From the NCBI GenBank assembly GCA_002269645.1, contig NIVC01003027.1, positions 1 to 64,000 of the forward strand: a stretch of DNA of 64,000 bases. The letters run 5' to 3'. How positions within the stretch are numbered: the first letter of the stretch is position 1; each line of letters starts with the position of its first letter. The DNA comes from Macrostomum lignano (taxonomy: Eukaryota). A program made the position numbers and the translations under genes. Below the pieces are notes generated by a model. The model saw nothing but the letters and a program-made list of their open reading frames with translations, was not told the DNA's origin and ran no database searches. This document shows, piece after piece, positions 43,575 to 44,329 of this stretch.

Positions 43575-43800
43575 TGACAGATAGACAGACAGACAGACAG
43601 ACAGACAGACAGACAGACAGACAGACAGACAGACAGACAGACAGACAGACAGACAGACAGACAGACAGACAGACAGACAGACAGACAGACAGACAGACAG
43701 ACAGACAGACAGACAGACAGACAGACAGACAGACAGACAGACAGACAGACAGACAGACAGACAGACAGACAGACAGACAGACAGACAGATAGATAGACAG
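43575..43800. repeat. (GACA)n microsatellite
   Basis: Direct reading. Confidence 0.98.
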
Positions 43801-43880
43801 ACAGGCATGCATAAGGCAGTTTGAAACTGCCAACCACGCACACGGAAGATTGAAGTTTGCCAGTTGTCGAACATTCGAAA

Positions 43881-43921
43881 AAACCGATATTTCGGCCAGA
43901 ACCTGCCCTTCTTCAGGGTTT
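43881..43921 (-). ncRNA. Minimal type I hammerhead ribozyme (Penelope-like-element type)
   Basis: Minus strand reads AAACC-CUGAAGA-A-GGGCAG-GUU-CUGGCC-GAAA-UAUC-GGUUU. Intact CUGANGA and GAAA core, stem I AAACC/GGUUU (5 bp), stem II 5 of 6 pairs, palindromic AUAU stem III, AUC cleavage triplet. Confidence 0.72.
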
Positions 43922-43980
43922 ATATTTGGGGTATAAAAACAACGATTATTTTAGCAGTGAACTCATTTTATTACTGAAAT

Positions 43981-44097
43981 TAGATAGACAGATAGATAAA
44001 TAAATAAATAAATAGATAGATAGATAGATAGATAGATAGATAGATAGATAGATAGATAGATAGATAGATAGATAGATAGATAGATAGATAGACAGAT
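43981..44097. repeat. (GATA)n microsatellite with TAAA variants
   Basis: Direct reading. Confidence 0.96.
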
Positions 44098-44329
44098 TAA
44101 TTCCCGTAATTAATAGATATTTTTTACCTGCGGTAGAGATGAAAAATTGCGCAAAATTCAGTGGGGACATGCTTTCTTCTCTGAAGCTGAGTGTACCGTG
44201 GATTAAGCTTAAGAAATAAAGCACAAATTGCTACATGTGTGCCTTCTTTGAAGGATAATCTGATTTAGGGACAGTCGTTCTTGGGGGGAATAACGTTTGG
44301 TGTCTCTTTTTAATCGATACAAAACTAAC

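What the first reader, a model, noticed from the sequence alone, without database searches (positions are those of the whole stretch)
43575..44100. Minimal hammerhead ribozyme in a short cassette bracketed by GATA and GACA microsatellites
Minus strand 43921-43881 has every element of a type I hammerhead: stem I AAACC/GGUUU, CUGAAGA core plus one extra A, stem II GG(G)CAG/CUG(G)CC, GAAA, palindromic AUAU stem III and AUC cleavage site (cut between 43886 and 43885). Such minimal, dimer-acting hammerheads are characteristic of Penelope-like retroelements and retrozymes. Here there is no PLE ORF. The motif sits in a ~180 bp unique island between two microsatellites with further palindromes (TCGAACATTCGA, GGCAGTTTGAAACTGCC), ~400 bp 3' of an RTE relic on the same strand. 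It could mark an undescribed non-autonomous ribozyme-bearing mobile unit that travels with or targets microsatellites, or a self-cleaving end for local transcripts.
Basis: partly seen in the sequence, partly recalled or inferred. Interest (0 to 1): 0.75.

Follow-up and report, generated by a model that had tools for sequence, protein, structure and literature searches.

The report
Lone Penelope-type minimal hammerhead motif
The motif is real and has the exact build of the small, dimer-dependent hammerhead ribozymes that Penelope-like retroelements scatter through invertebrate genomes, so it is most likely an ordinary single leftover copy sitting inside a GATA/GACA microsatellite, not a new kind of element.

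Summary
Minus strand 43921-43881 reads AAACC-CUGAAGA-A-GGGCAG-GUU-CUGGCC-GAAA-UA-UC-GGUUU. It sits in a 179-bp unique island between (TCTA)n and (TCTG)n arrays, about 420-500 bp 3' of an RTE-type reverse-transcriptase relic.

A generic minimal-hammerhead descriptor hits only this site in 64 kb. Chance expectation is about 0.0004-0.001 per window, or roughly 5-10 per genome.

I found the same build in multi-copy metagenome families and between tandem RT/GIY-YIG ORFs. A model built from those families scores this site 32.9 bits; the next best site scores 11.8.

No second copy, dimer partner or PLE coding relic exists in the window, and no homologue of the island was found elsewhere.

A 12-mer, TCTGTCTATCTA, flanks the island on both sides. 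This suggests insertion into a compound microsatellite, a bias already described for PLEs.

Verdict: a probable solo, likely inactive member of a known class in a Macrostomum-like flatworm. Copy number and cleavage remain untested.

The parts
43881..43921 (-). Minimal type I hammerhead motif: AAACC CUGAAGA A GGGCAG GUU CUGGCC GAAA UA UC GGUUU
   Evidence: Read directly. It is the only hit of a generic min-HHR descriptor in the window. It scores 32.9 bits, E~2e-7, with model R1, which was built from independent metagenome min-HHR families.
43917..43921 (-). Helix I, 5' strand (AAACC). It pairs with 43881-43885 (GGUUU) to give 5 bp, open-ended.
   Evidence: The length matches the 4-5 bp helix I of PLE min-HHRs (PMC4209133).
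43909..43916 (-). Core box CUGAAGA (C3-A9, 43916-43910) plus an unpaired A (43909) between A9 and G10.1
   Evidence: An inserted A is also present in 6 of 7 structured metagenome families and in all 6 HHRs found on the RT ORF contigs (5 of them with an RT/GIY-YIG ORF; L107's ORF has no GIY-YIG part of its own).
43894..43908 (-). Helix II hairpin GGGCAG-GUU-CUGGCC: G10.1-C11.1 closing pair, 5 Watson-Crick pairs and one internal G.G mismatch
   Evidence: Metagenome families B and E likewise have an internal bulge or mismatch in helix II.
43886..43893 (-). GAAA (G12-A15.1), then U15.2 A16.2 U16.1 C17. AUAU (43890-43887) is a self-complementary helix III that can only form between two copies. Predicted cleavage is 3' of C 43886.
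   Evidence: Palindromic 15.2-16.2 is a stated hallmark of the class (PMC4209133).
43802..43980 (-). 179-bp unique island carrying the motif: 59 nt upstream and 79 nt downstream of the hammerhead
   Evidence: No other copy in the window. No similarity outside the core to 620 kb of min-HHR-bearing loci. Its fold as RNA is not unusual, z=-1.2.
43981..43992 (-). 12-mer TCTGTCTATCTA directly 5' of the island. The same 12-mer lies directly 3' of it at 43801-43790. Candidate target-site duplication.
   Evidence: The weight is limited because the context is a microsatellite and the 12-mer also occurs at 44096-44085.
43790..43801 (-). Second copy of the 12-mer TCTGTCTATCTA, directly 3' of the island
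43981..44097 (.). (TAGA)n on the + strand, (TCTA)n on the - strand. About 29 units, with four TTTA units and one TCTG unit near the island.
43576..43804 (.). (GACA)n on the + strand, (TCTG)n on the - strand. About 57 units, with two TCTA units at the island-proximal end.
43815..43831 (-). Perfect 8+8 inverted repeat GGCAGUUU-C-AAACUGCC, a strong hairpin about 55 nt 3' of the predicted cut
   Evidence: There are 3 such repeats in the window against 2.6 expected, so it is not significant on its own.
43867..43878 (-). Small palindrome UCGAA-UG-UUCGA
   Evidence: About 200 of this size are expected per window, so it is not notable.
44340..45650 (-). Context only: a frameshifted, 5'-truncated RTE-type reverse-transcriptase relic. 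It ends in a (TTG)n-like tail and is not joined to the island.
   Evidence: RVT_1. Relatives at 66-84% identity, including Macrostomum lignano. The 3' end was defined against L001 and L002.

Best explanation
The motif is a genuine member of the Penelope-like-element (PLE) / non-LTR-retrozyme lineage of minimal type I hammerhead ribozymes. It is present here as a single orphan unit of about 180 bp in a Macrostomum-like flatworm genome.

Inferred mechanism. An RNA carrying the hammerhead, either a pLTR-type piece of a PLE or a monomer of a PLE-derived retrozyme, was copied into the chromosome by target-primed reverse transcription. It landed at the junction of a compound (TCTA)n-(TCTG)n microsatellite and duplicated 12 bp of target.

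In its parent element the ribozyme works only when two copies pair through the self-complementary AUAU. That pairing builds a 4-bp helix III and allows cleavage 3' of C17. Here that would be between 43886 and 43885, which would trim unit-length RNAs out of tandem transcripts.

At this locus there is no partner copy and no retroelement ORF. Helix II carries a G.G mismatch. The copy is therefore most likely an inert relic.

Shown: the motif, its fit to the class, its uniqueness in the window, the absence of any PLE ORF, and the flanking 12-mers.

Inferred: descent from a PLE or retrozyme, insertion by reverse transcription, and present inactivity.
For: 1. All core and helix elements are present. 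It is the sole hit of a generic descriptor in 64 kb, against about 4e-4 to 9e-4 expected by chance.

2. The motif shows traits the literature lists as emerging features of PLE min-HHRs: a nucleotide between A9 and G10.1, a G10.1-C11.1 pair, palindromic 15.2-16.2, helix I of 4-5 bp and a long helix II. The D. virilis variant also has a bulge in helix II and a 2-nt palindromic insertion (PMC4209133).

3. Independent comparators fetched here:
- A metagenome scan gave 120+ matches, of which 29 of 122 have helix I >=4 and helix II >=4, against about 0.3 expected. They fall into at least 6 families with different, co-varying stems. All 5 helix I pairs change on both sides, 85.6% of cells are paired versus 68% in shuffles, and the slid controls give 20-37%.
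- Families A, B and L109 share CUGAAGA-A-GG...CC-GAAAUAUC exactly with the window.
- Family A is a conserved dispersed unit of about 250 bp.

4. Model R1, built from those families without the window sequence, scores the site 32.9 bits. The next best site scores 11.8.

5. The same build, with the inserted A, lies on the ORF strand between tandem ORF1 / RT-GIY-YIG units in contigs L158, L159 and L160 and upstream of the single RT-GIY-YIG unit in L161 (where it lies inside ORF1), and 3' of an RT ORF in L107. That ORF's relatives carry RVT_1 and GIY-YIG domains.

6. Density argument: PLE-bearing animals carry hundreds to thousands of such motifs, mostly as solo copies (PMC4209133). Chance gives fewer than about 10 per genome.

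7. The 12-mer TCTGTCTATCTA abuts both ends of the island. Each array shows the other array's unit only at its island-proximal end. PLEs have a documented microsatellite insertion bias (PMC8557442).
Against: - No second copy of the motif or the island in the window.
- No close relative of this hammerhead in JGI metagenomes, using a transition-tolerant pattern.
- No similarity of the island outside the core to any comparator.
- No PLE coding relic anywhere in 64 kb.
- I could not show that the source genome contains PLEs or min-HHR families. No paper found with both 'Macrostomum' and 'hammerhead' concerns the ribozyme, and the one paper opened for 'Macrostomum' + 'Penelope' says nothing about PLEs in Macrostomum.
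- The R1 score is partly circular, because the comparators were retrieved with a pattern derived from this motif.
- The hammerhead fold (-9.2 kcal/mol without helix III) is 2.2 kcal/mol worse than an alternative fold (-11.4). For families A, B and L109 the hammerhead fold is the minimum-energy structure.
- The '12-bp duplication' lies in low-complexity DNA and recurs at 44096-44085.
- Comparator families are not enriched next to microsatellites (1 of 29). Short-read contigs tend to break at repeats, which weakens that comparison.
Confidence: 0.65

Rival explanations
1. Chance look-alike. A 41-nt stretch of unique intergenic DNA happens to satisfy the loose minimal-hammerhead descriptor. It has no ribozyme ancestry or function.
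For: - The descriptor is permissive. Random sequence yields about 1 hit per 69 Mb, both strands, which is several per genome.
- The motif is a single copy with no detectable relatives.
- Helix II has a mismatch, and the minimum-energy fold is not the hammerhead.
- Folding energy is not different from shuffles: z=-0.2 for the motif and -1.2 for the island.
Against: - The per-window expectation is only about 4e-4 to 9e-4.
- None of 35 partial-pattern matches in about 10^11 bases of viral contigs (my estimate of the collection's size) has helix I >=3.
- The motif also matches positions the descriptor leaves free, in the way real families do. The inserted nucleotide is A in 6 of 7 families and in 6 of 6 HHRs on the RT ORF contigs, together with GG/CC at the base of helix II and C17.
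- In PLE-bearing animals real motifs outnumber chance ones by 100-fold or more (PMC4209133).
Confidence: 0.2
2. An active, so far undescribed family of short non-autonomous hammerhead-bearing retroposons that specifically targets, or carries along, GATA/GACA microsatellites.
For: - The island is short (179 bp) and bounded on both sides by related tetranucleotide arrays.
- It is flanked by the same 12-mer on both sides.
- It carries a strong 3' hairpin that could serve as a reverse-transcriptase recognition element.
- It has no homology to the sampled min-HHR units.
Against: - There is no evidence of copy number greater than 1.
- Three other long GATA arrays in the same window (3243-3621, 6487-7188, 25387-25975) have no such island next to them.
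- Comparator min-HHR families show no microsatellite association.
- GATA and GACA arrays commonly occur together (own knowledge: Bkm-type repeats).
- A microsatellite bias is already known for PLEs, so even if this reading is true it would be a variant of known behaviour (PMC8557442).
Confidence: 0.08
3. A host-retained self-cleaving element that processes a local transcript in the Hox1-upstream intergenic region, for example by defining an RNA 3' end.
For: The motif is on the same strand as the Hox1/labial gene, 19.5 kb upstream of its first exon. An AAUAAA-like signal lies about 45 nt upstream of the motif, around 43970.
Against: - Minimal hammerheads of this type cleave poorly even as dimers (PMC4209133), and no partner copy is present.
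- No conservation data are available.
- The motif lies between two unstable microsatellites.
Confidence: 0.03
4. The island and the (TCTA)n array belong to the 3' UTR or tail of the neighbouring RTE-type element. RTE elements are known to seed microsatellites at their 3' ends.
For: They share a strand and lie close together. RTE-generated microsatellite families are documented (Tay et al. 2010, cited in PMC6765202).
Against: - Similarity to two related RTE copies stops at 44474 (contig end) and at 44416.
- The related element L001 ends in a (TTG)n tail right after its stop codon. The window has the equivalent tail at about 44335-44360.
- About 240 bp of unrelated AT-rich DNA separates that tail from the (TCTA)n array.
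Confidence: 0.03

Closest known systems
Minimal hammerhead ribozymes (min-HHRs) of metazoan Penelope-like elements (Cervera & de la Pena 2014, PMC4209133)
   Same: - Type I topology and the CUGANGA / GAAA / UH core.
- Helix I of 4-5 bp with no defined loop 1.
- An unpaired nucleotide between A9 and G10.1, and a G10.1-C11.1 pair.
- Helix II of 6-8 positions.
- Palindromic 15.2-16.2 in place of a real helix III, hence dimer-dependent.
- Most genomic copies are solo, without an ORF.
   Different: - No PLE ORF or second pLTR within 64 kb.
- No demonstrated family of copies.
- Helix II has a G.G mismatch.
- The host genus (Macrostomum-like) does not appear in the parts of the hammerhead/PLE papers I read or term-searched.
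Drosophila virilis Penelope hammerhead variant, and the rotifer, shrimp and mosquito variants with a small palindromic helix III (PMC4209133)
   Same: - A 2-nt palindromic insertion in helix III.
- A helix II of about 6 bp interrupted in the middle.
[quoted passage not shown]
   Different: - The D. virilis motif has a 2-bp helix I and overlaps an intron end.
- It is highly conserved in about 130 copies inside recognisable PLEs.
Animal non-LTR retrozymes and their monomer derivatives (Cervera & de la Pena 2020, PMC7229834; Li, Clavereau & Pollet 2026, bioRxiv 10.64898/2026.07.22.740005)
   Same: - Short, AT-rich, non-coding units (51-972 bp) with a type I hammerhead.
- Derived from PLE pLTRs.
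- Monomers are dispersed evenly in intergenic DNA.
- Target-site duplications longer than 4 bp, when present.
   Different: - Retrozymes proper are tandem arrays of at least 2 units, usually with canonical hammerheads that have loop-loop contacts and express circular RNAs.
- Here there is a single unit with a minimal motif and no expression data.
Schistosoma Sm-alpha / Sj-alpha SINE-like elements with hammerheads (Ferbeyre et al. 1998; Laha et al. 2000; cited in PMC6765202)
   Same: A flatworm host, and a short non-autonomous repeat carrying a type I hammerhead.
   Different: - Sm-alpha carries a canonical hammerhead with loops and a pol III promoter (own knowledge).
- No tRNA-like head is found here.
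- Rfam hammerhead models do not match.

Membership tests
Hammerhead ribozyme, type I | Conserved core: C3 U4 G5 A6 N7 G8 A9 ... G12 A13 A14 A15.1 ... U16.1 H17 | tested here: met
   CUGAAGA at 43916-43910, GAAA at 43893-43890, and U 43887 with C 43886.
Hammerhead ribozyme, type I | Three helices around the core, with helix I open | tested here: inconclusive
   Helix I has 5 bp. Helix II has 5 pairs plus a G.G mismatch. Helix III exists only as the intermolecular AUAU/AUAU duplex of a dimer. The monomer's minimum-energy fold is a different structure.
Hammerhead ribozyme, type I | Match to curated covariance models (Rfam Hammerhead_1, _3, _II, HH9, HH10) | tested here: not met
   No hammerhead family matches at gathering threshold or at E<=10. 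The same models also miss multi-copy min-HHR families A, B and D, so this test does not discriminate for the minimal class.
Hammerhead ribozyme, type I | Site-specific self-cleavage 3' of H17 | not testable with these tools
   This needs in vitro transcription of monomer and dimer constructs.
PLE-type minimal hammerhead (min-HHR) | Unpaired nucleotide between A9 and G10.1, with a G10.1-C11.1 closing pair | tested here: met
   A 43909, and G 43908 paired with C 43894. The same holds in 6 of 7 metagenome families and 6 of 6 HHRs on the RT ORF contigs.
PLE-type minimal hammerhead (min-HHR) | Short helix I (4-5 bp) and long helix II (6-8 bp) | tested here: met
   Helix I has 5 bp. Helix II has 6 positions with one mismatch.
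PLE-type minimal hammerhead (min-HHR) | Palindromic 15.2-16.2, or a small palindromic loop 3, allowing a dimeric helix III | tested here: met
   AUAU at 43890-43887 is self-complementary.
PLE-type minimal hammerhead (min-HHR) | Belongs to a multi-copy consensus family with compensatory stem changes in the same genome | tested here: inconclusive
   Only 64 kb of the genome is available, and it holds one copy. No near-identical copy was found in JGI metagenomes. Covariation was shown only between unrelated families from other organisms.
PLE-type minimal hammerhead (min-HHR) | Located in the pLTR of an element encoding RT plus a GIY-YIG endonuclease | tested here: not met
   No PLE-like coding sequence anywhere in the window. 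The literature states that most genomic min-HHRs are likewise solo (PMC4209133), so failing this test excludes 'part of an intact PLE' but does not exclude PLE ancestry.
Non-LTR retrozyme | Tandem array of at least 2 units, each with a type I hammerhead | tested here: not met
   A single unit. TRF, BLAST, the descriptor and the model all find no second unit. At most it is a monomer derivative.
Non-LTR retrozyme | Expressed as linear and circular unit-length RNAs | not testable with these tools
   No transcriptome data are available.
RTE non-LTR retrotransposon (3' UTR or tail) | Contiguity with the element's 3' end | tested here: not met
   Homology to related copies ends at or before 44416, and a (TTG)n-like tail lies at about 44335-44360. 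About 240 bp of unrelated DNA follows before the microsatellite.

The most novel reading that the evidence does not exclude
The 179-bp island is one copy of an uncharacterised family of very short hammerhead-bearing retroposons in macrostomid flatworms. The family would be mobilised in trans by a PLE and would insert preferentially at GATA/GACA (Bkm-type) compound microsatellites with duplications of about 12 bp. That would make these arrays landing pads and would put self-cleaving RNAs into Hox-cluster intergenic DNA.
Probability: 0.08. Interest if true: 0.5.

Novelty: new member of a known kind. Interest (0 to 1): 0.22.

Why it matters
If the main reading is right, this is routine repeat annotation: one more orphan Penelope-type minimal hammerhead.

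It still has some practical value:
- It flags that a Macrostomum-like genome probably carries HHR-bearing PLEs or retrozymes, which I did not find reported in the two literature searches made.
- It shows that Rfam's hammerhead models are blind to this widespread minimal class.
- If an empty site can be found, it offers a clean case for measuring the target-site duplication of a PLE-type insertion inside a microsatellite. Such duplications are usually unreadable there.

It does not open a new mechanism.

Tried and rejected
- Rfam scans: no hammerhead hit. I rejected this as evidence against the motif after the positive controls also failed.
- Thermodynamic fold of the motif and of the island: not distinguishable from shuffles. 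The dimer hammerhead could not be evaluated, because the intermolecular helix III is non-nested for ViennaRNA.
- In-window BLAST for further copies of the island: none found.
- Transition-tolerant pattern of this exact hammerhead in JGI metagenomes: 0 hits.
- Relaxed pattern in IMG/VR: 35 hits, all coding-sequence coincidences without helix I. I used these only as a negative control.
- PLE coding relics near the motif or anywhere in the window: Pfam on ORFs and six-frame translations, tblastn with 120 PLE proteins and a PLE profile HMM. A cluster of weak tblastn hits (E 0.2-0.85) on the plus strand of the island looked intriguing. It is at decoy level (best decoy E 0.098) and vanishes with the profile, so I rejected it.
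- tRNA-like SINE head: none. The bacterial promoter/terminator scan is not relevant to a eukaryote.
- Microsatellite association in the comparator min-HHR families: 1 of 29, so no support.
- Homology between the island and comparator units outside the core: none.
- Pfam and PDB searches to name the L107 ORF returned nothing. It was identified only through its relatives' RVT_1 and GIY-YIG domains.
- Literature on hammerheads or PLEs in Macrostomum: no search hit concerned the ribozyme, and the one 'Penelope' paper opened says nothing about PLEs in Macrostomum. The Lunse et al. paper (published online 2016) on dimeric PLE hammerheads and the supplements of PMC4209133 and PMC8557442 are not held.
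Full report
**What is there**

On the minus strand, 43921-43881 reads AAACC CUGAAGA A GGGCAG GUU CUGGCC GAAA UA UC GGUUU. In hammerhead numbering:
- Helix I is AAACC (43921-43917) paired with GGUUU (43885-43881).
- C3-A9 is 43916-43910, and an unpaired A sits at 43909.
- Helix II is 43908-43894, with G10.1-C11.1 closing. 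It has five Watson-Crick pairs, one G.G mismatch and a GUU loop.
- G12-A15.1 is 43893-43890. U15.2, A16.2 and U16.1 are 43889-43887. C17 is 43886.

Tandem Repeats Finder confirms (GACA)57 at 43576-43804 and (TAGA)29 at 43981-44097. The unique DNA between them is 176-179 bp long.

The 5+5 one is expected about 200 times per window. The 8+8 one (43815-43831) occurs 3 times in the window against 2.6 expected in random sequence.

**Surroundings and host**

Upstream on the same strand lies a frameshifted reverse-transcriptase relic (Pfam RVT_1, E=6e-8).
- Its closest relatives are short metagenome contigs at 62-84% identity and Macrostomum lignano proteins at 66%.
- Alignment with two related copies ends at 44474 (contig end) and at 44416.
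- The related element L001 terminates in a (TTG)n tail just after its stop codon. This matches the window's TTG-rich stretch at about 44335-44360.
- About 240 bp of unrelated AT-rich DNA follows before the (TCTA)n array. The island is therefore not part of that element.

The window also carries a Hox1/labial-type gene on the minus strand.
- Exon 1 is 24362-23367 and ends in the FKWMEIKR hexapeptide motif.
- The homeobox exon lies within 12261-11725.
- Its best match is a Macrostomum lignano homeodomain protein, 85% identical over 99% of the query including the non-homeodomain flanks.
- The source is therefore a Macrostomum-like flatworm, and the motif lies 19.5 kb upstream of Hox1.

**Is it more than chance?**

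I wrote a generic minimal-hammerhead descriptor with these rules:
- CUGANGA, followed by 0-1 inserted nucleotide;
- helix II of 4-8 pairs, with one mismatch allowed when it is 6 or longer;
- a loop of 3-8 nt, then GAAA;
- a self-complementary A15.1...U16.1 segment of 2-8 nt, then H17;
- helix I of at least 4 pairs.

The descriptor hits the window once, at this site. In 69 Mb of first-order Markov sequence with the window's dinucleotide content, both strands, it hit once with helix I >=4 and never with >=5. That gives roughly 4e-4 to 9e-4 expected per window, and about 5-10 chance hits in a genome of about 0.76 Gb (the M. lignano size quoted in PMC9469890).

The motif alone is therefore significant for a window but not for a genome. 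What decides the question is the ratio of real to chance motifs in such genomes.

Rfam gives no hammerhead match at gathering threshold or at E<=10. It also fails on multi-copy minimal hammerheads that I recovered from metagenomes, so this negative carries no weight.

**Fit to the known class**

Cervera and de la Pena (PMC4209133) describe the minimal hammerheads of metazoan Penelope-like elements as having:
- a helix I of 4-5 bp with no defined loop;
- a helix II larger than usual;
- a conserved G10.1-C11.1 pair;
- palindromic 15.2-16.2 positions in place of a helix III, so that two copies must pair to form an active ribozyme.

The Drosophila virilis variant adds a bulge in the middle of a 6-bp helix II and a 2-nt palindromic insertion in helix III.

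Every one of these traits is present here. The 'one extra A' and the 'AUAU stem III' are hallmarks, not defects.

The same paper states that most such motifs occur as single dispersed copies, thought to be truncated PLEs, and that they cleave poorly even as dimers.

**Independent comparators**

A transition-tolerant copy of this exact hammerhead found nothing in JGI metagenomes.

A looser pattern, CTGANGANGG-N9-13-CCGAAATATC, gave different results in two collections.
- In viral contigs it gave 35 matches. None had a helix I of 3 pairs or more, so all are coding-sequence coincidences.
- In metagenome contigs it gave more than 120 matches. Of 122 occurrences, 29 have helix I >=4 and helix II >=4, where about 0.3 would be expected.

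The structured metagenome matches fall into at least six families with different stems.
- Family A: GCCC-CUGAAGA-A-GGUUUGU-UUU-GCAAACC-GAAAUAUC-GGGC, on about 29 contigs.
- Family B and L109 share the window's CUGAAGA-A-GG...CC-GAAAUAUC exactly.
- Families B and E also interrupt helix II.
- Across 14 distinct sequences, all five helix I pairs and three helix II pairs change on both sides. 85.6% of cells pair, against 68% in shuffles and 20-37% with slid partners. Selection for paired stems contributes to these numbers.
- Family A is a conserved dispersed unit of about 250 bp, with the hammerhead about 60-75 nt from its 5' edge.

A covariance model built from these 14 sequences, without the window, scores the window site 32.9 bits (E about 2e-7, rough calibration). 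The next best site scores 11.8 bits. This score is partly circular, because the retrieval pattern came from the motif. The independent contribution is the two helices and their spacing.

**Link to Penelope-like elements in my own data**

- In L107 a GAAAUAUC-type minimal hammerhead lies 3' of a 654-aa ORF.
- That ORF has 1,599 relatives at E<=1e-10. The full-length ones carry RVT_1 and C-terminal GIY-YIG domains.
- In L158 and L160 the ORF1/RT-GIY-YIG units are arranged in tandem; L159 and L161 each hold a single ORF1 + RT-GIY-YIG unit. My generic descriptor finds a hammerhead on the ORF strand — between units in L158 (second hit) and L160, upstream of ORF1 in L158 (first hit) and L159, and inside ORF1 in L161. 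It finds none on the opposite strand.
- Each of these has an inserted A after A9, a 3-5 bp helix I and a palindromic 15.2-16.2.

The window's motif therefore has the build of hammerheads that demonstrably sit in PLE inter-ORF repeats.

**What is missing**

- No second copy of the motif or of the island in the window.
- No PLE coding relic in the window, by Pfam, by tblastn with 120 PLE proteins (best E 0.10 against 0.098 for the decoy) or by a PLE profile HMM.
- No similarity of the island outside the core to 620 kb of min-HHR-bearing loci.
- The source genome could not be searched.
- No paper found with both 'Macrostomum' and 'hammerhead' concerns the ribozyme, and the one paper opened for 'Macrostomum' + 'Penelope' says nothing about PLEs in Macrostomum.
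- For this copy the hammerhead fold without helix III (-9.2 kcal/mol) is less stable than an alternative fold (-11.4). For families A, B and L109 the hammerhead fold is the minimum-energy structure. This fits a somewhat decayed copy.

**The microsatellites**

Read on the minus strand, the two arrays are (TCTA)n and (TCTG)n, one transition apart.

The upstream array ends ...TTTA TCTA TCTG TCTA TCTA | island. The downstream array begins island ...CCTG | TCTG TCTA TCTA TCTG TCTG....

The 12-mer TCTGTCTATCTA thus abuts both ends of a 179-bp insert (43992-43981 and 43801-43790). The only TCTG unit inside the TCTA array's repeat run (a second one precedes its first unit, at 44096) and two of the three TCTA units in the TCTG array lie at the island-proximal ends.

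This is what insertion with a 12-bp target duplication into the fuzzy junction of a compound GATA/GACA array would produce. I estimate the coincidence at roughly 1 in 100. The context is low-complexity, and the 12-mer recurs at the far end of the array (44096-44085), so I treat it as suggestive only.

Craig et al. (PMC8557442) report a strong microsatellite insertion bias for several PLE clades, often obscuring target-site duplications. A 2026 preprint (bioRxiv 10.64898/2026.07.22.740005) shows that animal retrozymes derive from PLE pLTRs and leave evenly dispersed monomers of 51-972 bp.

My comparator families show no microsatellite association (1 of 29). The three other GATA arrays in the window carry no such island.

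**Conclusion**

The best explanation is a genuine but orphan PLE/retrozyme-lineage minimal hammerhead unit, probably retro-inserted into a compound microsatellite and probably inactive for lack of a partner. I give this a confidence of about 0.65. A pure chance match remains possible (about 0.2) until the genome is searched.

The finding is a new member of a known kind and of modest interest.

Noticed in passing
window 24362-23367 and 12261-11725, minus strand: A Hox1/labial-type gene. Exon 1 is poly-Q-rich and ends ...PPFKWMEIKRHQPKATGKGK. The homeobox exon reads [56 protein letters not shown]. An intron of about 11 kb, packed with minisatellites, separates them. The best match is Macrostomum lignano A0A1I8JR16, 85% identical over 99% of the query, which places the window in a Macrostomum-like flatworm.
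   Followed up: partly
whole window, e.g. 35695-40707, 15582-17373, 60925-62125: Extreme density of mini- and microsatellites, giving 65 TRF rows. Examples are a 38-mer repeated 132 times (5 kb), a 36-mer repeated 50 times and a 49-mer repeated 24 times. Many of the long 'ORFs' are just translated repeats.
   Followed up: no
window 250-3621 versus 3639-7188: A tandem segmental duplication of about 3.3 kb. The same series of arrays recurs in the same order: GGGTTCTG, the 16-mer GGCGCCTTTAGGAAGC, a 16/32/48-mer, then (TCTA)n.
   Followed up: no
window 32236-33516, plus strand: A 426-aa ATG-initiated ORF in a GC-rich stretch (59% GC) with no Pfam match. It could be a real exon-less gene or a chance ORF.
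   Followed up: no
window 44340-45650, minus strand: A GC-rich (about 60%) RTE-type RT relic with several frameshifts, lying in an AT-rich region. Its closest relatives are in environmental metagenome contigs at up to 84% protein identity and 81% DNA identity, which suggests related meiofaunal flatworm DNA in those samples.
   Followed up: partly
loci L042, L138, L125, L105, L072: Rfam 15 hammerhead models do not detect multi-copy minimal hammerheads of the PLE type even at E<=10. This abundant class is effectively unrepresented in Rfam.
   Followed up: yes
loci L048, L049, L079, L087, L095, L141, L157 and others (JGI Ga0123355, Ga0123357, Ga0131853, Ga0268261): A further abundant hammerhead family with a different register...CUC CUGAUGA U GGAC...GUCC GAAA-UAUC-UA | GAG.... 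It reads best as a 1-bp helix III with a UAUC loop and cleavage after CUA. My helix I test missed it because of the shifted register.
   Followed up: no
loci L158-L161: The contigs with RT/GIY-YIG ORFs related to L107 all carry an upstream ORF1 of 529-828 aa (529-567 aa in L158-L160) with no Pfam domain. L158 and L160 are arranged as tandem units, with the minimal hammerhead 150-250 nt upstream of ORF1 in L158, L159 and L160 (in L161 it lies inside ORF1).
   Followed up: partly
window 43848-43976, plus strand: Six related PLE proteins give weak tblastn hits (E 0.2-0.85) to the plus-strand translation of the island, aligned to an RT motif region (LLELTxxNNDFxF). The hits are at decoy level and disappear with a profile HMM, so they are probably noise.
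   Followed up: yes
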